This document shows positions 1,935 through 45,741 of a stretch of 64,000 nt of DNA, one piece after another. The notes beneath the pieces were generated by a model. That model was not told the origin of the DNA. It did no database searches and worked only from the letters and a program-made list of their open reading frames with translations. Position 1 is the stretch's first letter; each line of letters opens with the position of its first letter. The stretch spans positions 164,598 through 228,597 of IMG/VR virus record IMGVR_UViG_3300015262_000001. One strand, written 5' to 3'. The translations under genes and the position numbers were made by a program.

Positions 1935-1959
1935 TAAGGGGACCCGAAGATCCCCCTTA
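1935..1959 (-). terminator. intrinsic terminator (cUUCGg loop)
   Basis: Minus strand TAAGGGGGATC-TTCG-GGTCCCCTTA followed by TTTCTTATTT. Confidence 0.75.
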
Positions 1960-1973
1960 CAACTATGGCTGTG

Positions 1974-3107
1974 TTACGCCAGGCCAAACAAACCGGCCGG
2001 TACGTGATGTACAGGTGCAGGCAGTGCTTCAACTGGAGCCTGGTCAGAAGCACCCAGGGATACCAGGTTGCTGCCAGGCATCACACTGCGACCCAGAGCA
2101 GAACCGCCAGCGCCGAGTGCCAGACCAACCATGCCGCCAACAACGTAACGACCGAATTGACCATCGACGTACTGGTCAACTTGCTCACCGGCGAAGAACG
2201 CGCCGATGCCGCCGACCACAGTGCCGATTGCCGAACCAGCAGTCAGACCGCCACGAGCCATCATTTCCATGCCGCCACCGACCACGGCGCTACCGGCTGC
2301 GATCCAGCTGGTACGGATGCCTTCGTCACGTTCACCCATCAGGCTGAAGCGCGACTTGTCGGAGTAATGACCGTCATCTTTAGGCTGGTTCACTGCACAC
2401 CAGCGCATGAAACCGTGTACAGCTTGGCTGCCTTCTTCGTCACCCAGGCCTTCACTGAAGGTCACGAAGTTCTCGTCGAAGCCCTTGGACTGATCAGCGG
2501 TCAGCGAGAACGCGTCCCACTTGGCAGTCAGTTCAGGAGCAGTGGAGAGGAAAGCAACCCAGGCAGTGGCGCGCTGCTCTGGGGTGGTACGGCCGACGGC
2601 GATCATGGCGATTTCGAAACCGGCGATGGCTTTTTGCAGATCAGCAGCTTTGGTAGTTTGTGCGTTCATGGTGTTGGTGTCCTGTTCGTTTGCGTTAAAG
2701 GAGGTTTGACCGTTGTGGTCTGGGGCAGTGGTGGTCGAATTATTGACCGGTTGTTGATGAACGTGTTCGCCAGCCAAATCCTTCTCGATGAAGGTTGCTT
2801 CATTTGGCTGGCCTGCAACGGCGACCTGGGCGGTACCAGACAGTTCAGTAACCCTGACTGGAGCTGGCTCAGGATTGAATTCACCGGCCTTCTTGATATG
2901 GTTGAAGGACCAGTTAACTCCGAGCTGGTTATTCACCATTTGCAGCACAGGTTGACGATCCCGAGTAGCTACCTGGGATTGGTCCACCATCACCGTTTTA
3001 ACATAGGCCAGTTGAACGGCCTCCGGTGCACCTTCAGTACGAAGTTTGGAAACTACCGCCACCAGCATGGAAGCGATGTTTGCAACTTGGTCGTTCTTGG
3101 TGTTCAT
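1974..3107 (-). CDS. early protein with C-terminal glycine-zipper membrane segments (377 aa)
   Basis: C-terminal third holds GxxxG-rich hydrophobic helices (AVVGGG; AIGTVVGGIGAFFAG; VVGGMVGLALGAGG); SD AGGAGAG. Confidence 0.8.
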   Translation of the reverse strand: MNTKNDQVANIASMLVAVVSKLRTEGAPEAVQLAYVKTVMVDQSQVATRDRQPVLQMVNNQLGVNWSFNHIKKAGEFNPEPAPVRVTELSGTAQVAVAGQPNEATFIEKDLAGEHVHQQPVNNSTTTAPDHNGQTSFNANEQDTNTMNAQTTKAADLQKAIAGFEIAMIAVGRTTPEQRATAWVAFLSTAPELTAKWDAFSLTADQSKGFDENFVTFSEGLGDEEGSQAVHGFMRWCAVNQPKDDGHYSDKSRFSLMGERDEGIRTSWIAAGSAVVGGGMEMMARGGLTAGSAIGTVVGGIGAFFAGEQVDQYVDGQFGRYVVGGMVGLALGAGGSALGRSVMPGSNLVSLGASDQAPVEALPAPVHHVPAGLFGLA

Positions 3108-3167
3108 AGCGGTACTCTCCTACAAGTAAGGTTAGATTACTCGTCATGGCGAATAATCTTTATTGAA

Positions 3168-3211
3168 TAATCACACAAGTAATATAGACACAAAAACATC
3201 TGTATCTTAAA
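3168..3211 (-). promoter_or_regulatory. extended early promoter TTTAAGATACAG-N10-GTCTATATTACTTG
   Basis: Contains TATATTAC; 37 of 44 nt identical to 41605-41648. Confidence 0.75.
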
Positions 3212-3219
3212 TTTACTTG

Positions 3220-3360
3220 TTACTGTTTAGTGGCGCTCATAATGCCCCGAGTAATGTACTGGGCGCTAGTACCTCCATCAGAAGGTTCCATGTAAGCCAC
3301 TGTCATACAGCAGGACGCAATAACGCTAAACAGGCCCACCAGTACTAAGGTAGCTTTCAT
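3220..3360 (-). CDS. small membrane/secreted peptide (46 aa)
   Basis: AGGAGA SD; MKATLVLVGLFSVIASCCMTVAYM... has a hydrophobic N-terminus; manually translated. Confidence 0.6.
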   Translation of the reverse strand: MKATLVLVGLFSVIASCCMTVAYMEPSDGGTSAQYITRGIMSATKQ

Positions 3361-3454
3361 TTTGTTTCTCCTGAAAGAAGTATGTTGTTTATACACACGG
3401 ATGATGTAGTCTTGAAATAAGCTGTAAGTTAAAATGCAAAAAATAAAGGTACTC

Positions 3455-3495: not shown

Positions 3496-3942
3496 TTACT
3501 TCTTCGGTTTCTTAATGCCGTACTGCTCGTTGTTGAAGATCAGCGTGCGTCCAGCCCAATCTGCGAACAGGTTGTTCAGAGCAAGGATCTCATACTTGTC
3601 GAAGTCATACTTCACCGACATATGGAACAAAGGTGTACCGTAAGCGTGCTGATACCCCTCATCCTTCAAACGGCGAAACTCTTCCAACATGTCAGTGCTG
3701 GTCAGCATGAACACCAGACCGTCACCCAAAGTTTTCAGGGCAATGATATTCGCCGTGAACTCCTTGGATGCAGGCATCAGGTTACACAACGGCGTAGGAA
3801 TATCACGCTCGTCGAACACCATGGTAGCATGCAGTTCGTGTTTTGATTCTGGAGAAATACCTGCCAGCACCAACTTCGAAATGATTTCTTCCTGCATCTC
3901 TGACTTGAGTTGCACACTGACGTAACTATAGTCCAATTCCAT
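3496..3942 (-). CDS. acb1: 2H phosphodiesterase, Acb1 / T4 gp57B-like anti-CBASS nuclease
   Basis: Two HxT/S motifs (HAT, HMS) about 70 aa apart. The layout YV..L / HATMVF / LVFMLTS / GYQHAY..FHMSVKY parallels T4 gp57B as I recall it (HSTICY / LVLVLDS / GATHDF..PHITLSY). Length 148 aa. Confidence 0.7.
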   Translation of the reverse strand: MELDYSYVSVQLKSEMQEEIISKLVLAGISPESKHELHATMVFDERDIPTPLCNLMPASKEFTANIIALKTLGDGLVFMLTSTDMLEEFRRLKDEGYQHAYGTPLFHMSVKYDFDKYEILALNNLFADWAGRTLIFNNEQYGIKKPKK

Positions 3943-4418: not shown

Positions 4419-5342
4419 TTACTTCTTCCCTAGTAATAGTTTCCACGCCATAACCGGATGCATTGCGAAAGCCATGATTTTGTCATACAGTGAATAGTCA
4501 AGCACCTCATGGCTGCGAGCGAAGCGTTTGTCGTTGTAACTGATCGTGAAACCGGCGGCATCTGAATGCCCGCCACCACCAAAGTATTCAGCGATTGCAG
4601 ATACGTCAATACGGCCCTTCTGACAACGGATGGAATACTTACGGCCTTTAGGCAAATCCATGTAGACCAGTGCGAACGGATAATCCTTGGAAAGAACATC
4701 ACCCAGGTCAGACGCAAAGAATATGTTGGCGTTGACCACAGGTACTTCGTAGCCCAAGCATTTCATCGTGCGAGCGTTCATTGACACACGCGTGGTGTCC
4801 TGCTCGTGCTTACGTAACAGAATGCGCCCCTCAGCAATCAGGTCCAGCGGATCGGTATTGATCAACGCATCAAACTGTTCAACGTTAAACGGGTAGGAAA
4901 AGGCCGCGGTTACCCAATTGTTGGTATTCGGGTATTTGAACTTCCACAGATCGCGGTCTTCAACATACAACAACCCTTCTGGCGGAGGAGAGCTATTGAA
5001 GTACTTCCAGGCCAGCATGGCACCCGAATGGCTCTCGTCTACAACAAAGAGCCCTTCGAGATTTTTCTTTGCAGTGGCGTGATGATCCAGAACAACTACG
5101 TCATGCGCACGCTTCAGCATTTCCACCATGACTTCACGTGGATAACTAAAGTCCACCACGTAAACCATCTTGCCGTCTACGTCAGGCAGCTTGTTGTTGT
5201 AAGCAGCGGCCACCAACTCGATGTCGATACCGAGTCGCTTGAAGTGGCGCCATACCACCCATGCAGCGCCAACACCATCCAGACAGTCTTTGTGATAGAT
5301 GCACAAGACTGGTTTCATTTCCATATCCGTACTTGATTCCAT
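4419..5342 (-). CDS. DHH/DHHA1 phosphoesterase (NrnA-like)
   Basis: Motifs YHKDCLDG, VVDFS, VLDHH, EDRDLW and C-terminal GGGHSDAAGF. Confidence 0.9.
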   Translation of the reverse strand: MESSTDMEMKPVLCIYHKDCLDGVGAAWVVWRHFKRLGIDIELVAAAYNNKLPDVDGKMVYVVDFSYPREVMVEMLKRAHDVVVLDHHATAKKNLEGLFVVDESHSGAMLAWKYFNSSPPPEGLLYVEDRDLWKFKYPNTNNWVTAAFSYPFNVEQFDALINTDPLDLIAEGRILLRKHEQDTTRVSMNARTMKCLGYEVPVVNANIFFASDLGDVLSKDYPFALVYMDLPKGRKYSIRCQKGRIDVSAIAEYFGGGGHSDAAGFTISYNDKRFARSHEVLDYSLYDKIMAFAMHPVMAWKLLLGKK

Positions 5343-5893: not shown

Positions 5894-6376
5894 TTACCCC
5901 AAGAAACCTTCATCGGTTTCAGTTGGATTGTTAGCAGCGGCTACAGCCAGCTTGTCCGCCAGTTCGTTATCAGGAACACCGGTATGACCCCGTACCCAAA
6001 AGAATTTAACCTTGTTGGCTTTAAGCAACGGCTGAATACGCTGCCAGAGGTCTTTGTTCTTAATAGGTTCCTGGGTCTTCCAGGCGATCCAGTTACTGCG
6101 GGCCCAGCCATTCAACCACTTGGTTGCAGAGTTGATCACGTACATGGAGTCGGTGGTAACTTCAAAGACCGTACCGGGCTTGCCAAACTCCTCCAGTGCA
6201 ACGATGACCGCCAGCAACTCCATGCGATTATTGGTGGTTCGGAAAAAGCCTTTCGAGAGTGTGACAACCTCGTCTCCGCATCTCGCTACAATCCCGTAAC
6301 CTCCAGGGCCTGGGTTACCCAGAGCACTGCCGTCCGTGTGCACCTTGTAGGTAATAGGGGGTTCTTTTTTGCTCAT
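5894..6376 (-). CDS. rnhA: ribonuclease HI
   Basis: TDGSALGNPGPGGYG, TTNNRMEL, TDSMYV, KNKDLW, WVRGH and NELADKLA motifs. Confidence 0.97.
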   Translation of the reverse strand: MSKKEPPITYKVHTDGSALGNPGPGGYGIVARCGDEVVTLSKGFFRTTNNRMELLAVIVALEEFGKPGTVFEVTTDSMYVINSATKWLNGWARSNWIAWKTQEPIKNKDLWQRIQPLLKANKVKFFWVRGHTGVPDNELADKLAVAAANNPTETDEGFLG

Positions 6377-40902: not shown

Positions 40903-40925
40903 AAAGGGGAGCTAACTCCCCCTTA
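40903..40925 (-). terminator. intrinsic terminator
   Basis: AAGGGGAG/CTCCCC stem with TTTATTTTTT on the minus strand. Confidence 0.65.
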
Positions 40926-40933
40926 CTTACCGC

Positions 40934-41197
40934 TTAGGCCGCCCTGGCCATAAACAGGTTCAGCAGACTACCATTGAACACCATGTGATCTTGCAGTGTC
41001 TTTGGGAATTGCTGAACTTCCATTTGAACCAGTGGGTTATAGAGGCGGGTCTCCAGGAGTGCCCGGTCGCCGCCTTCAACTTCACTGCTGCAACGCAGAA
41101 CTTCCAGCATAGAGCGGAACCGAATTAACTCGACTTCGCACTTAGGGAAATCGCTGGTGGAGAAACCCATCAGCTTGTCGAAGATCTTAGCAACCAT
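40934..41197 (-). CDS. hypothetical protein (87 aa)
   Basis: AAGGAG SD. Confidence 0.7.
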   Translation of the reverse strand: MVAKIFDKLMGFSTSDFPKCEVELIRFRSMLEVLRCSSEVEGGDRALLETRLYNPLVQMEVQQFPKTLQDHMVFNGSLLNLFMARAA

Positions 41198-41228: not shown

Positions 41229-41561
41229 TTACTGAGGCTCGTTTACGAAACAGTCAACGATCGAACAAACTGAACTTGCTACAGCTACACCGAACAGACC
41301 AGACATGGTGCCGCTGATGATCTTGCCTGTGCTGTTAAGCTCTGCAACACCCCACAGAGTACCTACTGCATAACCGGCAACTGCGCCAGCTACACCACCT
41401 GCGATACCGCTGCCCAGGGAACTGCCCTGAGATACACATGCCGCTGCACCAACTACTGCACCAACTACGCCACAGACTTGGCCAACGCTTACACCGTCAT
41501 TACGATCGCCGTAGAAAGATTTCATAGCGGCAGCACGTTCTGCTTGATTAAAATTAGTCAT
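41229..41561 (-). CDS. small glycine-zipper membrane protein (110 aa)
   Basis: GVVGAVVGAA, GSGIAGGVAGAVAGYAVG and SGTMSGLFGVA segments; GGGAG SD. Confidence 0.75.
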   Translation of the reverse strand: MTNFNQAERAAAMKSFYGDRNDGVSVGQVCGVVGAVVGAAACVSQGSSLGSGIAGGVAGAVAGYAVGTLWGVAELNSTGKIISGTMSGLFGVAVASSVCSIVDCFVNEPQ

Positions 41562-41604
41562 GTTGTAACTCCCATTGGGTTTAGTATGAAAGACTTAATT
41601 GTCT

Positions 41605-41648
41605 TAATCACCCAAGTAATATAGACGTGAAACTAACTGTATCTTAAA
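41605..41648 (-). promoter_or_regulatory. extended early promoter, second copy
   Basis: TTTAAGATACAG-N10-GTCTATATTACTTG, same spacing as 3168-3211. Confidence 0.75.
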
Positions 41649-41671: not shown

Positions 41672-41703
41672 AGTAACCTACCGGGGCTACCCGGTAGGTT
41701 ACT
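41672..41703 (-). terminator. terminator hairpin
   Basis: 14-bp stem AGTAACCTACCGGG/CCCGGTAGGTTACT. Confidence 0.75.
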
Positions 41704-41727
41704 TATCTTAAACGTCCGTGTGACTAC

Positions 41728-44055
41728 TTAGCTCAATGCCAACAGGCACAGTGGCTTTTCACGTGATACGAAACGCAGTGTAGCAACGTTACGATCAATC
41801 GTGGAATAGCTGAACAGCCACATGCCGCCGCTTTCGGTAAACCGCAGCAGTTTGTCAGTAACCATGACGTCATCATCTTCCGTCATGGTTTCATCAAAGC
41901 CGTCTTCAATCATCTTGAAGTATTCCGGCCATTTACTACGTTTGATACGAACGGGCACGTTGGCTTCGGTATACGCTGGACCGGTACGCTTGTTGATCAC
42001 ATTGATATACATGTGACGACCAACAACCAGTTCCAACTCACCTTTCACCAGATCAACAACCGACGGTTCTTTACCTTCACCCACTACATACGGGTTAATG
42101 TAGTCGAACATTCGGATAGATTCGTTGAGATAGTTTGCTTTCTCAACTTCCACCAGATGTAGCATTGTTTCTGGATCATGTTGCTTCAACCAATCGATCA
42201 GCGCACGGTAGTCAGTCAGGATGTTGTTAACCGACAAATGCCCTACGCCGTTCTTGTTCGAGTTGTAACCCGCACAGTTGATCAGCCAGTTGTTGAGAAC
42301 CTGCGTCAGATGCGTGCCAATGAATTTGATCAGGTCAGAACTGACCTTGCCTTGGACATCATAACGACCGACGGCCGCTACTGCATTGACGAAGCTTGCA
42401 CGATCAATGTTGTCCTTGAACAAGAACGCTAGATCTTCGTGCAGTAAATCTTTTTCTTCCTTGCTCTTGCAGGTGTAGGTGTCCCAGTTAACAGCATGGA
42501 AACCCACGGCATTGATCTTGGTGAAGTTCCTGGTCAGGCGGTCATTCAGTGTATCGATGGTGCTTTCCAGCTGTTTGCTGGAGTTGCTAACAACAGGATC
42601 GGTAATTGCAATAACCGGTACTGCCTGTTCCATCTTCTCTACCGTTTCGATTGGAATGTCCATGGTTTTCTCAACCACAACATCAGCCAACGGGAACGGC
42701 TTAACTACCCAGGAGTCATCCAACTCGTCTGGGTTTTCCAACAGTGGTAACAACTTAGCTGGGTCCGTGAGGACAGTTTGCATTTCGAGGCCCTCTTTGC
42801 GGACGATAGTACTGAACCACCCACTGTCGGTATCGAGGTCGATGATGACAATACGGAAGCAGTCCTTGAGAACCGTTTCCTCTGCCTTCTGTTCCTCGTG
42901 ACGACGGTAAGCGTGTTGAATTTTCTTCCAGTCACTTTCCGGGATGAAATAGTGATTGGGTTTGCCGATGTTGTAAAAGAACCGGTTGAGTCTGAACTCA
43001 CCACGATTGCCCGGGTTCAGGTTGTTGAAGTCTTGACGTACCTCATCCCAACTTTTCATAACCTCACCTCCAATAACAAGTGATCTGTCTTGAGGGGCTT
43101 GTTTATACTGTCCCCGGTTCATGGCATTGTTTTGTACCATGCGATAAATGTCTTGCATGGCTTCATCCTGATAACCCACTGATGCTGCAACAGGTGGTGG
43201 ATCAAACGAACGTTGCACGTAGTCTGACGCCGGACCGTAAAGAATGTTGTAGTCGGTACGGGTCGATTCAGGACGTTTGAACTCCAGGTTGTTGTACGGC
43301 GACGTCTGGTTAAAGATGTCGTATACAGCAGCAGCAGCTTCCTTAAAGTTCTCCAGGTTGCTAATGCGAGCCTGGATAGCTTTGGTCAACCGGTTGGTGT
43401 AACGACGACCGTTAGGGGACTTCATCAACCAGTTGATCATTTCAAAGAACAAAATGTTGCGACAGGCAATGAACGCCGTGTTCAGATACTCAGCTTGCTG
43501 CAACTGATCACGATTACCATTGCGCAGCATCTCAATCAGGCCTTTACCAAAGAACGGCATGGCATTGATTGCAATAACGCGAGTGAACTCATGCTGCTTG
43601 TTAACGTCTTCAATAAACGCGTTACGGATCTCGTCGACCTGCTGCATCTCGTTCAGACGAAAGTCTTCACGAGCTTTACGGTACTCTTCAAAGAAAGGAC
43701 CAGCACGGTGATAGATCTGTTGCAGGAACATCTGCATTGCACCAGCCACCCGGTCAATCAAGTAGGCGTTACTGGTTGGATCGTTTTCTTGACTGGTGCG
43801 TAGTGAGCGGAGTGCTTCATCTTCATAAAGACTGCCGCTCACGCCACCCCAGTTAAAACCACCACCACTTTGAGCGTTGGTGTTGTTCAGGTTTTGCGAC
43901 ATGATGTTGCGGATTACATCACCCGGTGACATGTTAGCGTTAGCTTGCATCGGGTTGTTCTGATAACCTGTGCGATTCATCGGGTTCAATGGGTTATTAG
44001 CCCCCATGTTCCCGTCTGGAATCTGCACAGCAGCTGGGTTTGTTGGTTTAATCAT
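41728..44055 (-). CDS. large conserved hypothetical protein (775 aa) with N/Q/M/G-rich N-terminus
   Basis: AGGAG SD; directly downstream of the RNAP subunit gene. Confidence 0.8.
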   Translation of the reverse strand: MIKPTNPAAVQIPDGNMGANNPLNPMNRTGYQNNPMQANANMSPGDVIRNIMSQNLNNTNAQSGGGFNWGGVSGSLYEDEALRSLRTSQENDPTSNAYLIDRVAGAMQMFLQQIYHRAGPFFEEYRKAREDFRLNEMQQVDEIRNAFIEDVNKQHEFTRVIAINAMPFFGKGLIEMLRNGNRDQLQQAEYLNTAFIACRNILFFEMINWLMKSPNGRRYTNRLTKAIQARISNLENFKEAAAAVYDIFNQTSPYNNLEFKRPESTRTDYNILYGPASDYVQRSFDPPPVAASVGYQDEAMQDIYRMVQNNAMNRGQYKQAPQDRSLVIGGEVMKSWDEVRQDFNNLNPGNRGEFRLNRFFYNIGKPNHYFIPESDWKKIQHAYRRHEEQKAEETVLKDCFRIVIIDLDTDSGWFSTIVRKEGLEMQTVLTDPAKLLPLLENPDELDDSWVVKPFPLADVVVEKTMDIPIETVEKMEQAVPVIAITDPVVSNSSKQLESTIDTLNDRLTRNFTKINAVGFHAVNWDTYTCKSKEEKDLLHEDLAFLFKDNIDRASFVNAVAAVGRYDVQGKVSSDLIKFIGTHLTQVLNNWLINCAGYNSNKNGVGHLSVNNILTDYRALIDWLKQHDPETMLHLVEVEKANYLNESIRMFDYINPYVVGEGKEPSVVDLVKGELELVVGRHMYINVINKRTGPAYTEANVPVRIKRSKWPEYFKMIEDGFDETMTEDDDVMVTDKLLRFTESGGMWLFSYSTIDRNVATLRFVSREKPLCLLALS

Positions 44056-44079: not shown

Positions 44080-45741
44080 TTAAGCAAAGGGTTCGCGGTA
44101 GCGTAGGCGTTTATCCGTCTTCTCAAACAGCCACTTCAGCGATGGGTCCAACGCTGTTGTTTTGCCTTGAATCAGATATACACATGGATTGAGATAGCCT
44201 CGACCATCCGGGTAGGGTCCAGTTACCCGAAGGAAGCTGTTTACAAATGCAATGCTCGCATGCGCGCTGCCTGCACTGTCGGTGGGATCAAACTCACCGC
44301 GCTTCTTCGCTTTGGTCGAATTCGTATACACACGATGCTGAGGCATACAACCCAACACATAGTCCACATACGGGCAATCGGTTGGCGTCGCTTCCTGAAT
44401 GAGATTGGTTGTACGTGAATTGTCAATCTCCTTAATGTGAAAGTTGTTGGTCAGGAAACGAGCAACCTTTTTCTGGTTAAGCTCGGAGTTGTTTTTGATC
44501 TCGTGCTTGAACTTGTTGGCGGCTGTGATCAGCTTGTCCAACGTAAACTCCAAACTCGCCAGTTCCTTGTGGAACATGTCTGCGCGATCCGTGGTCTGCA
44601 CAATCTCACTGCGGTTGGCAATGATGTAGTTAAACAACTCAAACATGTTGCTCACTACGATCGACTGACTGGCAAACTTCTTGATCGAGTCTTCGTCGAG
44701 GTACTCGTTAATGGAATCAAAGTGCTCATTCATCAAGCGCATGATGTAATCATTACTGTCACCGGCTTTTACCGAGCAACGACCAATGATCAACTTCCAA
44801 TAATCCGGGTTATCGATATGGTCGATATCGAAGTACGACGAGAGGCAGTCGATTACGAACAGCAGAGCACTGGCATACTGCAAGCCCATTGCACTGAGTT
44901 CCTTACGCTTGCTCGATTTGTTGCGAATTGCAATGCCGTAGTCATGAGGAACAAACTCCCCCAGGTACTTGGCGTTACCAGAACGACTGGCGCGGGTAAA
45001 GATCTCCCAACGGTCCTCTGGCTTACATTCCGATATCAATACTTCAATAGGTGCAATTTCATAATCACACTCACCAAAGATATCAATCGCTTTACTGAAC
45101 CCCATGTCAGCAAAGGTATACCAAGCCAACAGCGGCATAGGTGTTTTGGTATCGTTGATCTTGCGGGACTCAGTCGGGCTGTAGAAGCGGTTAGCCGCCA
45201 GGTTCAGCTCGGTGGTCTTGTACGTCAAGTTACCCGTGTCGGTGAAAACCTGGGAGAACTTGAAGTGCTCAGTGCCGATCTTGAACTTAAAGCCCAACAC
45301 CTTAACAAACAAGGCATTCTCTTTAGTGACCGGTAGACCACGTTCAGCCAACACAATCTGCAAGCTGTACTGAGTGCCGCGCAACCACAGATCACCATAC
45401 ACATCGGTATACGGCAACATGGTGTATTGCTGCATCTCGATGATTTCACCCGCCCGGTTAACGTATTCGAACTTCAACTTCACCGGGTACAACGTTTCCT
45501 TGTGGATATCAAACAGCTTGGTACTACTCTGGATCAAGTGGCTGATGTATTCATCAGGATCCACTTCTTCAACACACTTGAAAAACACGCCGCGCTTTTC
45601 GATGCTCTTAAAGATCATCTTTAGGCAGTTCTCGTAATAGTGAACAGCACCCTCAAACTCGTTCTGATGGAATCCCTCGGTTATCGTTGAGTTAAACCGT
45701 GGCATTGAGTTATCAATGGCTCTGGCTAGTTTAAGTGACAT
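44080..45741 (-). CDS. non-virion RNA polymerase beta-like subunit, N-terminal part (phiKZ gp123-like)
   Basis: 553 aa; MPRFN, LPYTD..G.LWLRGTQY..QIVLAERG and EATPTDCP motifs; located two genes from the major capsid gene. Confidence 0.75.
   Translation of the reverse strand: MSLKLARAIDNSMPRFNSTITEGFHQNEFEGAVHYYENCLKMIFKSIEKRGVFFKCVEEVDPDEYISHLIQSSTKLFDIHKETLYPVKLKFEYVNRAGEIIEMQQYTMLPYTDVYGDLWLRGTQYSLQIVLAERGLPVTKENALFVKVLGFKFKIGTEHFKFSQVFTDTGNLTYKTTELNLAANRFYSPTESRKINDTKTPMPLLAWYTFADMGFSKAIDIFGECDYEIAPIEVLISECKPEDRWEIFTRASRSGNAKYLGEFVPHDYGIAIRNKSSKRKELSAMGLQYASALLFVIDCLSSYFDIDHIDNPDYWKLIIGRCSVKAGDSNDYIMRLMNEHFDSINEYLDEDSIKKFASQSIVVSNMFELFNYIIANRSEIVQTTDRADMFHKELASLEFTLDKLITAANKFKHEIKNNSELNQKKVARFLTNNFHIKEIDNSRTTNLIQEATPTDCPYVDYVLGCMPQHRVYTNSTKAKKRGEFDPTDSAGSAHASIAFVNSFLRVTGPYPDGRGYLNPCVYLIQGKTTALDPSLKWLFEKTDKRLRYREPFA

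What the first reader, a model, noticed from the sequence alone, without database searches (positions are those of the whole stretch)
1974..3211. Glycine-zipper membrane protein behind an extended early promoter duplicated 38 kb away, again in front of a glycine-zipper gene
Seen: 3168-3211 and 41605-41648 match at 37 of 44 nt with an identical 10-nt spacer. In both places the first downstream gene (1974-3107 and 41229-41561) has three GxxxG-rich hydrophobic segments in the same order (AVVGGG / AIGTVVGGIGAFFAG / VVGGMVGLALGA vs AVVGAA / IAGGVAGAVAGYAVG / ISGTMSGLFGVA). Established: TATATTAC marks phiKZ early promoters read by the injected virion RNAP; glycine zippers drive membrane oligomerisation or pores; Chimalliviridae begin infection in a lipid-bound early phage infection vesicle. 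Inference: this is an immediate-early membrane-protein family, possibly for vesicle remodelling, superinfection exclusion or membrane depolarisation.
Basis: partly seen in the sequence, partly recalled or inferred. Interest (0 to 1): 0.62.

Follow-up and report, generated by a model that had tools for sequence, protein, structure and literature searches.

The report
Paired glycine-zipper genes behind special early promoters
A giant "nucleus-forming" phage carries two anciently related genes for small glycine-rich, probably membrane-inserting proteins. Each sits behind the same unusually long early promoter, and the arrangement is kept in cultured relatives such as Pseudomonas phage EL, so its unknown function can now be tested at the bench.

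Summary
The two 44-nt stretches match at 37 of 44 positions, and both downstream proteins end in three glycine-zipper helices.

It is not a simple two-copy duplication. The genome is a 228.6-kb relative of Pseudomonas phage EL (Chimalliviridae). It has about 19 EL-type promoters (TTTCAAACCTAYATTAY), all on one strand. About 8 of them carry an extra upstream box, TTTAAGWTACAG. The other extended copies precede unrelated genes that are not glycine-rich.

The two proteins are distant paralogs. They share a domain of about 95 aa: a G-[DE]-R-[DN]-[DE]-G collar followed by helices of about 19, 23 and 26-30 aa. Profile-profile E-values are 5.5e-6, and 2e-14 with a broader short-family profile. Column shuffles never reached the real score.

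All seven relatives searched whole with a family profile (five IMG/VR genomes, EL, RisingSun) have a short and a long copy. These are EL gp82/gp127 and RisingSun gp87 plus a 363-aa ORF. Both copies nearly always keep the extended promoter. The short copy always follows the gene at the position of JADA, a protein found at the early infection vesicle.

No Pfam, PHROG, NCBIfam or PDB match exists. Hydrophobicity is marginal, and no RNA data were available. Early timing, membrane insertion and function therefore remain inferences.

The parts
3168..3211 (-). Extended early-type promoter of the long paralog. Upstream box TTTAAGATACAG at 3200-3211, 10-nt spacer at 3190-3199, core GTCTATATTAC at 3179-3189, leader start GTGATTA at 3168-3174.
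   Evidence: Conserved upstream of orthologs at 37-84% protein identity and, more loosely, in EL gp127. RisingSun has a matching site (125115-125145) about 0.7 kb upstream of the C-terminal domain match in its long ORF, whose start I did not map.
3134..3159 (-). 10-bp stem-loop in the 5' leader of the long paralog (AGATTATTCG / CGAGTAATCT).
   Evidence: RNAalifold on 7 orthologous leaders. 5 of 10 pairs show a compensatory change in at least one sequence. The sample is small.
1974..3107 (-). Long paralog P0001 (377 aa). Helical N-domain 6-72, disordered linker about 80-143, helical domain 144-239, C-terminal glycine-zipper domain.
   Evidence: Ortholog of EL gp127 (profile E 1.1e-23), in conserved synteny RNase H - DHH - 2H phosphoesterase - gp127.
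2067..2372 (-). Shared domain of P0001 (residues 246-347): collar G-E-R-D-E-G-I-R followed by three glycine-zipper helices.
   Evidence: 81% mean column identity across 16 homologs whose N-termini drop to about 35%. hhalign against the short family gives E 5.5e-6, and 2e-14 with the broader profile.
1936..1957 (-). Intrinsic-terminator-like hairpin plus T-rich tail just after the P0001 stop codon.
41605..41648 (-). Extended early-type promoter of the short paralog. Box at 41637-41648, core CTATATTAC at 41616-41624.
   Evidence: Conserved upstream of orthologs in 5 close and 3 of 5 distant relatives, and in EL gp82 and RisingSun gp87.
41586..41611 (-). Leader stem-loop GUGA..AAGAC-loop-GUCUU..UCA. 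Its sequence is identical before two unrelated genes elsewhere in the genome.
   Evidence: The sequence is invariant, so there is no covariation evidence.
41229..41561 (-). Short paralog P0002 (110 aa): collar G-D-R-N-D-G at residues 18-23, helices 26-44, 49-71 and 77-106.
   Evidence: Ortholog of EL gp82 (36% identity over 96 aa, E 5.6e-13; Foldseek E 2.2e-4, TM 0.75).
41675..41700 (-). Terminator hairpin that ends the upstream operon and is followed by a T-run, immediately 5' of the short paralog's promoter.
   Evidence: Read from the sequence. Equivalent hairpins occur in the relatives, EL and RisingSun.
40934..41197 (-). 87-aa ORF, probably co-transcribed with P0002. A terminator-like site follows at 40907-40922.
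   Evidence: No family match.
3220..3360 (-). 46-aa lipoprotein-like ORF (signal peptide, lipobox IAS|C) directly upstream of the P0001 promoter.
   Evidence: The coding sequence is also present in close relatives.
3402..3432 (-). Another extended promoter (TTAACTTACAG-N10-GACTACATCA), serving the lipoprotein ORF.

Best explanation
The two sites belong to a subclass of this phage's EL-type early promoter, presumed to be read by the virion RNA polymerase. The general form is TTTCAAACCTAYATTAY. The subclass adds the box TTTAAGWTACAG 10 nt upstream of the core and starts a leader (GTGAWTA...) that folds into a 5' stem-loop.

The two genes behind them are ancient paralogs of a previously undescribed domain of about 95 aa. 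It consists of a charged collar, [FL]-x-G-[DE]-R-[DN]-[DE]-G-[IV]-[RS], followed by three glycine-zipper helices. One copy stands alone (110 aa). The other is fused to a soluble helical N-terminal region of about 250 aa.

Shown here: the homology; a short and a long copy in every relative searched whole with a family profile; conservation of the promoter at both genes from this phage to EL and RisingSun; and constant linkage of the short copy to the gene at JADA's position.

Inferred: both are made early and abundantly. They insert N-in/C-out into the inner membrane and/or the inner-membrane-derived early infection vesicle. They pack through their GxxxG faces into homo- or hetero-oligomers that change envelope permeability or organisation. 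The cytoplasmic arm of the long copy would act as a docking site. Among specific roles I rank envelope takeover (superinfection exclusion or depolarisation) slightly above a vesicle role, because the family is absent from phiKZ.
For: Promoter class:
- Searches give about 19 sites, all on the minus strand, of which about 8 are extended.
- The motif matches the EL consensus published in PMC7058600.
- The same core precedes the gp79-like / nvRNAP-subunit / JADA-position operon (window 46954).

Conservation of the extended form at both genes.

Homology:
- hhalign scores 36.1, E 5.5e-6, over 73 columns.
- Column shuffles gave a mean of 12.4 and a maximum of 25.7. Local block shuffles gave a maximum of 28.0. 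None of 100 reached the real score in either test.
- The A3 profile also finds stand-alone proteins of 113-145 aa in 1.8 billion sequences.
- A3 against the broad short-family profile gives probability 98.3%, E 2e-14.
- Foldseek with the P0001 model retrieves EL gp82, Miami gp042 and RisingSun gp87.
- The two models have matching helix lengths.

One short plus one long copy: exactly two matches in each of five distant genomes, and also in EL and RisingSun.

Linkage to the gene at JADA's position.
Against: - With the collar motif removed, the profile score falls to the shuffle level (15.8). The homology call therefore rests on the motif, its register and the shared architecture.
- BLASTP between the two proteins is not significant.
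- The A6 profile contains sequences that were first found with A3, so the 2e-14 value is partly circular.
- The helices are only marginally hydrophobic: Kyte-Doolittle 1.1-1.9, and summed insertion free energies of +3 to +6 kcal/mol on a Hessa scale I recalled from memory.
- No transcript data exist for this phage.
- The complex prediction for the two domains gave no verdict.
- phiKZ lacks the family.
- Two of five distant genomes lack the promoter directly upstream of the short copy.
Confidence: 0.6

Rival explanations
1. Holin/antiholin pair. The 110-aa three-helix protein would be the unidentified holin of this phage group. The long paralog, with the same membrane domain plus a cytoplasmic arm, would be its regulator.
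For: Apart from its own orthologs, the best BFVD matches of the P0002 model are class I and LydA-type holins (probability 0.8-0.96, TM 0.44-0.53). Size and three-helix layout fit. To my knowledge no holin is assigned in this clade. The two endolysin Pfam families I searched (SLT, Phage_lysozyme) found nothing in the genome, so the lysis cassette was not located.
Against: The Foldseek E-values are 0.3-2, which is not significant. The genes sit behind the early-type promoter. There is no charged cytoplasmic C-terminal tail; the charge is N-terminal. Hydrophobicity is marginal. In EL the genes (gp82, gp127) are far from the endolysin gp188; that gene number is from my own knowledge and was not checked here.
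Confidence: 0.12
2. No special relationship. The two proteins are unrelated low-complexity Gly/Ala-rich peptides that converged, and the DNA match is only the shared promoter consensus.
For: BLASTP is not significant. With the collar removed the profile score equals the null. Other extended promoters precede unrelated genes. Feature search gives only compositional look-alikes, class II bacteriocins at 0.85.
Against: Shuffle controls that keep composition, and even local layout, never reach the real score. The collar motif sits the same 2-3 residues before helix 1 in both families. Exactly two matches to the A6 profile per genome in five distant genomes. Reciprocal structural retrieval.
Confidence: 0.12
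3. The domain is not membrane-embedded. It would be a soluble or peripherally bound Gly/Ala-packed three-helix bundle, for example a scaffold or condensate component.
For: Marginal hydrophobicity and positive summed insertion energies. Invariant Glu and Arg lie inside or at the ends of the long family's helices. No signal sequence.
Against: Three uncharged stretches of 19-26 residues separated by 4-5-residue turns, with i/i+4 small-residue faces. The weak structural neighbours are membrane transporters and holins.
Confidence: 0.1
4. The extension turns these sites into host sigma-70 promoters (TTAAGA-18-TATATT), so the genes would be read by host RNA polymerase.
For: The sigma-70 scan scores both sites 9 of 12.
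Against: Conservation does not follow the sigma-70 consensus. EL gp82 has TTAACT-18-TAAATA and RisingSun has TTAAGT-18-TATATA. The conserved TACAG lies outside a -35 hexamer. phiKZ-like phages are described as rifampicin-insensitive and as keeping their DNA enclosed (PMC13282480).
Confidence: 0.05

Closest known systems
Predicted early promoters of phage EL (WTTTYAAACCTACATTATY) and phiKZ (TATATTAC), as tabulated in PMC7058600. The phiKZ set is described as driven by the virion RNAP in PMC13282480.
   Same: Same core and upstream T-tract. Intergenic, co-oriented with the genes, often just after a terminator. One copy heads the operon with the nvRNAP subunit.
   Different: The subclass here has an additional conserved box, TTTAAGWTACAG, 10 nt upstream, and a conserved leader start GTGAWTA with a stem-loop. 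I did not find this extension described in the papers searched. Neither the EL gp82 site nor the EL gp127 site is annotated as a promoter in the EL record.
PeSL cassettes of T4-type phages (promoter-early plus stem-loop repeats flanking small accessory genes). This comparison is from my own knowledge and was not checked in a paper here.
   Same: Repeated terminator / early-promoter / stem-loop units with near-identical sequence in front of unrelated small genes (genome 71155, 116243, 206221).
   Different: Different promoter type and polymerase. No evidence here that the repeats mediate recombination. The units are at conserved orthologous positions rather than in hyperplastic regions.
Glycine-zipper membrane motifs (GxxxGxxxG) as found in channel and pore-forming proteins, Pfam Gly-zipper families and class II bacteriocins.
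   Same: i/i+4 Gly/Ala/Ser faces on helices of 19-26 residues. The feature-based search lists Blp-type bacteriocins as look-alikes (score 0.85, a lead only).
   Different: No Pfam, NCBIfam or PHROG family is matched. The collar motif and the fixed three-helix layout are specific to this family.
Class I (three-TMD) holins.
   Same: About 100 aa and three helices. Weak Foldseek neighbours.
   Different: Early-type promoter, no basic C-terminal tail, low hydrophobicity, not next to lysis genes.
Early phage envelope proteins used for superinfection exclusion (T4 Imm/Sp, T5 Llp lipoprotein). This comparison is from my own knowledge.
   Same: Small proteins predicted to be made early and aimed at the envelope. 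Here a 46-aa lipoprotein with the same promoter class lies next to the long paralog.
   Different: No sequence or structural similarity. The function was not tested.

Membership tests
EL/phiKZ-type early (virion-RNAP) promoter | Match to the published core consensus with an upstream T-tract | tested here: met
   GTTTTTGTGTCTATATTAC and GTTTCACGTCTATATTAC compared with WTTTYAAACCTACATTATY (EL) and TATATTAC (phiKZ). The two sites have GT rather than CC before CTA.
EL/phiKZ-type early (virion-RNAP) promoter | Intergenic, co-oriented with the downstream gene, also present before genes known to be early in phiKZ | tested here: met
   All of the roughly 19 sites are on the coding strand. One heads the gp79-like / nvRNAP subunit / JADA-position operon.
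EL/phiKZ-type early (virion-RNAP) promoter | Early, rifampicin-insensitive transcription start at the motif | not testable with these tools
   No RNA run holds this phage. No EL transcriptome was found.
Glycine-zipper transmembrane proteins | GxxxGxxxG-type small-residue faces on helices | tested here: met
   G55/G59/G63/G67 and S83/S87/G91/A95 in P0002; G295/G299, G324/G328/G332 and G335/G339 in P0001. Helices are modelled at pLDDT of about 80-90.
Glycine-zipper transmembrane proteins | Hydrophobic enough to span a bilayer | tested here: inconclusive
   Kyte-Doolittle 19-residue windows score 1.1-1.9. Hessa-scale sums are +3 to +6 kcal/mol, using scale values recalled from memory.
Pfam Gly-zipper / Rick_17kDa_Anti / Bacteriocin_IIc families | Match to the family HMM | tested here: not met
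   hmmscan against Pfam at E up to 1 listed none of them. NCBIfam found nothing.
Class I holin | Three TMDs in about 95-110 aa | tested here: met
   Three helices in 110 aa, assuming they are membrane-spanning.
Class I holin | Highly charged, basic cytoplasmic C-terminal tail | tested here: not met
   The C-terminus is DCFVNEPQ. The charged region is N-terminal.
Class I holin | Late expression, next to endolysin or spanin genes | tested here: inconclusive
   The promoter is of the early type. SLT and Phage_lysozyme searches found no endolysin in the genome, so distance to a lysis cassette could not be measured.
New 'collar + three glycine-zipper helices' family (EL gp82 / gp127) | Collar G-[DE]-R-[DN]-[DE]-G 2-3 residues before helix 1, then helices of about 19, 23 and 26-30 residues with 4-5-residue turns | tested here: met
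   Both proteins. Profile E-values 5.5e-6 and 2e-14.

The most novel reading that the evidence does not exclude
The short and long paralogs would be the first phage-encoded membrane components of the chimallivirus early infection vesicle. Made from the strongest early promoters, they would insert into the inner-membrane-derived vesicle. The short copy, always encoded just downstream of the gene at JADA's position, or the cytoplasmic arm of the long copy, would tether soluble early factors such as JADA to the vesicle, or open it for hand-over of the genome to the nascent nucleus.
Probability: 0.12. Interest if true: 0.85.

Novelty: new variant of a known kind. Interest (0 to 1): 0.5.

Why it matters
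The reviews I searched by keyword (PMC12908238, PMC13282480) contain no mention of 'membrane protein' or 'transmembrane', so I found no phage-encoded membrane protein described for nucleus-forming jumbo phages. How soluble early factors reach the lipid early-infection vesicle is, as far as I could find, unresolved.

This work defines a conserved two-gene family with a dedicated promoter subclass. Members exist in cultured phages: EL gp82 and gp127 in Pseudomonas aeruginosa, and RisingSun gp87 in Erwinia. A vague 'hypothetical protein' thus becomes a concrete pair of candidates for knock-down, localisation and topology experiments.

The upstream promoter box is also a handle for dissecting promoter recognition by the virion RNA polymerase in the EL branch.

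If the proteins prove to be ordinary superinfection-exclusion or lysis-timing factors, the finding is modest but still fills an annotation gap.

Tried and rejected
- Direct BLASTP of the two proteins: not significant.
- Pfam, PHROGs and NCBIfam scans of both proteins and of the EL orthologs: nothing usable.
- PDB sequence search with the domain profile: only chance-level rows.
- tblastn of both proteins against cultured phages: empty, probably because of low-complexity masking. The EL orthologs find only Elvirus records.
- Foldseek against PDB and VIA-align wide search with the P0001 model: only generic helical or membrane-helix neighbours, Z at most 7.2.
- Atlas shape search with the P0002 model and atlas feature search with the P0001 N-terminal region: uninformative.
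- Complex prediction of the P0001 C-terminal domain with P0002: no verdict (score 0.00, partner poorly folded). This is neither support nor evidence against binding.
- The look-up of sequencing runs: only DNA metagenomes (rhizosphere, plant, food, biofilm) and no RNA.
- P0003 as a sequence homolog of JADA: only a marginal 31-residue BLASTP match to phiKZ gp124 (E 0.012) and no PDB hit. The assignment is therefore positional only.
- The conserved Cys pair (CSIVDC) of P0002 as a general feature: rejected, because it is confined to the close clade.
Full report
**1. Where the window lies**

The window is the last 64 kb of a 228,597-bp IMG/VR virus record with direct terminal repeats and 50% G+C. 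A 775-aa protein of the window (41728-44055, minus strand; P0003) finds Pseudomonas phage EL at 38% identity, Erwinia phages RisingSun and Joad at 30%, and Klebsiella phage Miami at 25%. Elvirus and Risingsunvirus are genera of Chimalliviridae. DNA runs that hold the stretch come from rhizosphere and plant metagenomes; small-share runs from food and biofilm metagenomes were also listed.

**2. The DNA observation**

The two 44-nt stretches are as described. Both read TTTAAGATACAG-N10-GTCTATATTACTTGNGTGATTA, and 37 of 44 positions are identical. A pattern built from them has two matches in the window and none in 100 shuffles.

The pair is not unique, however.
- Genome-wide, CTATATTAC occurs 7 times and CTAYATTAY 17 times, always on the minus strand.
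- A curated list of about 19 sites gives the consensus TTTcAaaCCTAyATTAyTa..gTG.
- This is the promoter predicted for EL (WTTTYAAACCTACATTATY). It is related to the phiKZ TATATTAC and to the OBP, 201phi2-1 and N1M2 motifs, including the downstream GTG (PMC7058600, Table 2).
- In phiKZ, early promoters are served by the injected virion RNAP (PMC13282480).
- One site (window 46954) heads the operon gp79-like / non-virion RNAP subunit (44080-45741; phrog_2943, E 3e-156) / P0003. PMC13282480 states that nvRNAP subunits are expressed from the phiKZ early promoters. This is the best indirect argument that the motif marks early transcription here.

**3. A promoter subclass**

Eight of the 19 sites carry an extra box, consensus tTTTAAGaTACAG, 10 nt upstream of NNCTAYATTAY. 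Four are near-identical: genome 71155, 116243, 167784 (window 3187) and 206221 (window 41624).

Three of those four also share an identical leader, GTGATTAAGACAATTAAGTCTTTCA, which folds into a stem-loop. The leader of the long paralog is different. It forms a 10-bp stem with compensatory changes at 5 of 10 pairs among 7 orthologs.

The other extended promoters precede a 120-aa protein, a 64-aa coiled-coil protein, a 255-aa protein, a 496-aa protein and a 46-aa lipoprotein-like ORF just upstream of the long paralog. None of these is glycine-rich. A sixth site (genome 142489) has a downstream gene I did not identify. The promoter is therefore not private to the glycine-zipper genes.

A sigma-70 scan reads the two sites as TTAAGA-18-TATATT, 9 of 12. 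Conservation across genera does not follow the sigma-70 consensus, so I give that reading little weight.

**4. Conservation of promoter plus gene**

The extended promoter stands in front of the following orthologs.
- The long gene in close relatives (63-84% protein identity) and distant ones (37-38%).
- The short gene in five close relatives and three of five distant ones.
- EL gp82, with TTTAACTTACAGTTATTTTCAGATCTAAATAATCAGGGTGAATA.
- EL gp127, where TTAAGTTAAGG sits at the same distance from CCTACATTAC.
- RisingSun gp87, with TTTAAGTTATAGTTCATTTCAAGTCTATATAACTTGGGTGAATA.
- The RisingSun long ORF, where a matching site lies about 0.7 kb upstream of the domain match. I did not map that ORF's start.

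Neighbouring proteins have diverged to about 30% identity, so DNA-level conservation of this kind implies selection on the whole 44-nt element. In RisingSun, two of the three pattern matches in the genome lie at or upstream of these two genes.

**5. Are the proteins related?**

- BLASTP between them is not significant.
- Each has a family among metagenomic jumbo phages.
- In the long family the last roughly 100 residues before the tail are far better conserved than the rest: 81% mean column identity against 48% overall.
- hhalign of that domain (A3) against the short family (A1) gives probability 86%, E 5.5e-6, over 73 columns that cover all three helices with two one-residue gaps.
- One hundred column shuffles of A1 gave a mean score of 12.4 (sd 3.2, maximum 25.7). 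One hundred local shuffles in blocks of 8 gave a mean of 14.5 (maximum 28.0). The real score is 36.1.
- With the N-terminal collar removed the score falls to 15.8. The signal therefore lies in the collar (SLMGERDEGIR in the long copy, SFYGDRNDGVS in the short) and in its register with the helices, not in the glycine-rich helices themselves.

Independent support:
- The A3 profile, run against 1.84 billion representatives, found 64 clusters. Nearly all are proteins of 300-600 aa with the domain near the C-terminus. Six are stand-alone proteins of 113-145 aa with the same collar and layout.
- Those six resemble the P0002 family (probability 73%, E 3e-5 over 85 columns).
- A combined short-family profile (A6) matches A3 at probability 98.3%, E 2e-14 over 91 columns. 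This is partly circular, because A6 contains sequences first found with A3.
- With A6, each of five distant genomes gives exactly two matches: one ORF listed at 117-131 aa (107-123 aa from the first Met) and one of 417-542 aa.
- Foldseek with the P0001 model lists the Miami 131-aa, EL 118-aa (gp82) and RisingSun 123-aa (gp87) proteins among its top rows, at non-significant E-values.
- The P0002 model finds EL gp82 at E 2.2e-4, TM 0.75.
- The two AlphaFold2 models have helices of 19/24/26 and 19/23/30 residues with 4-5-residue turns. In both, the collar ends 2-3 residues before helix 1.

I conclude, at roughly 80% confidence, that these are ancient paralogs.

**6. What the proteins look like**

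P0001 has four parts:
- a confidently modelled helical domain (6-72, pLDDT above 95);
- a disordered Q/N/T-rich linker (about 80-143);
- a second helical domain (144-239, pLDDT above 90);
- the collar and three helices, followed by a Pro-rich tail ending in GLFGLA.

P0002 is essentially the domain alone.

The helices are only marginally hydrophobic. The long family has invariant Glu281 and Arg285 in or after helix 1, and Glu308, Arg320 and Arg340 at helix ends. There is no signal peptide. With a large N-terminal soluble part, the natural topology is N-in/C-out, but this is inference.

No Pfam, PHROG, NCBIfam or PDB match exists. All EL-group records call both genes hypothetical.

**7. Genomic context**

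The long paralog keeps the EL order RNase H - DHH phosphoesterase - 2H phosphoesterase - gp127. The 2H enzyme reaches Pfam's threshold for Acb1, the anti-CBASS nuclease (28.2 bits, cut-off 27).

The short paralog lies 170-610 nt downstream of the P0003 homolog on the same strand in all ten IMG/VR relatives. It is the next gene in EL and RisingSun, and is three genes downstream in Miami.

P0003 occupies the position that defines JADA, directly after an nvRNAP subunit. JADA is an essential, early, abundant protein that localises to early-infection vesicles and is sensed by Avs5 (PMC12931631). Sequence similarity of P0003 to phiKZ gp124 is marginal, so the equation is positional.

phiKZ has an unrelated soluble protein, gp125, at the short paralog's position and no detectable family member.

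**8. Mechanism**

Shown: a conserved promoter subclass, paralogy, pairing of a short and a long copy, and synteny.

Inferred: early and strong expression, insertion into the inner membrane and/or the vesicle derived from it, and oligomerisation through glycine-zipper faces.

The complex prediction between the two domains gave no verdict, so it says nothing either way.

I favour a role at the envelope early in infection. The family is absent from phiKZ, which argues for an accessory role such as exclusion of secondary infection, or control of membrane energetics, rather than a core step of vesicle biology. The neighbourhood also fits: an early lipoprotein, Acb1 and a DHH enzyme.

The constant linkage to the gene at JADA's position keeps the vesicle hypothesis alive, at about 12%. 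A holin/antiholin reading is possible but fits the promoter type and the tail poorly.

**9. Verdict**

This is a new, uncharacterised two-paralog family with a dedicated variant of a known promoter type. It can be tested in cultured phages.

Noticed in passing
window 3496-3942 (-), 4419-5342 (-), 5894-6376 (-): A 148-aa 2H phosphoesterase just passes Pfam's threshold for Acb1, the anti-CBASS nuclease (28.2 bits against 27). PHROG calls it 'RNA ligase'. Next to it are a DHH/DHHA1 phosphoesterase and an RNase H, in the same order as EL gp126-gp125-gp124. This may be a nucleotide-signal-degrading counter-defence cluster.
   Followed up: partly
window 3220-3360 (-) and 3402-3432 (-): A 46-aa lipoprotein-like ORF (MKATLVLVGLFSVIAS|C...) has its own extended early promoter. 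No terminator separates it from the long paralog's promoter. It is present in close relatives. EL has only a 162-nt gap with no annotated gene at this position.
   Followed up: partly
window 41728-44055 (-) and 44080-45741 (-): The 775-aa P0003 lies directly after the nvRNAP subunit. This is the defining position of JADA/phiKZ gp124, the early-vesicle protein sensed by Avs5 (PMC12931631). Sequence similarity to phiKZ gp124 is only marginal (E 0.012). The short glycine-zipper gene follows it in every relative examined.
   Followed up: partly
genome G000:C1 71100-71179, 116189-116267, and window 41562-41648: Three unrelated genes share a near-identical cassette of terminator hairpin, extended promoter and leader GTGATTAAGACAATTAAGTCTTTCA. 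The arrangement recalls the promoter-early/stem-loop (PeSL) repeats of T4-type phages.
   Followed up: partly
window 41704-41712 (-): A third TTTAAGATA lies just 5' of the terminator hairpin after P0003. Relatives have TTTAAGGTAAGTAACCTACC at the same place. Its role is unknown.
   Followed up: no
whole genome (G000): All of the roughly 19 promoter-like sites lie on the minus strand; no convincing site lies on the plus strand.
   Followed up: no
P0001 residues 343-377 and homologs: The long family, and some stand-alone members, end in a Pro-rich tail closing with G-[LM] (GLFGM, VPGL, VKGL). This may be a conserved C-terminal signal of unknown meaning.
   Followed up: no
big-search hit P0073: A 4,932-aa protein matched the domain profile in 27 short stretches. 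This is most likely a compositional match to a glycine-rich repeat protein, not a relative.
   Followed up: no
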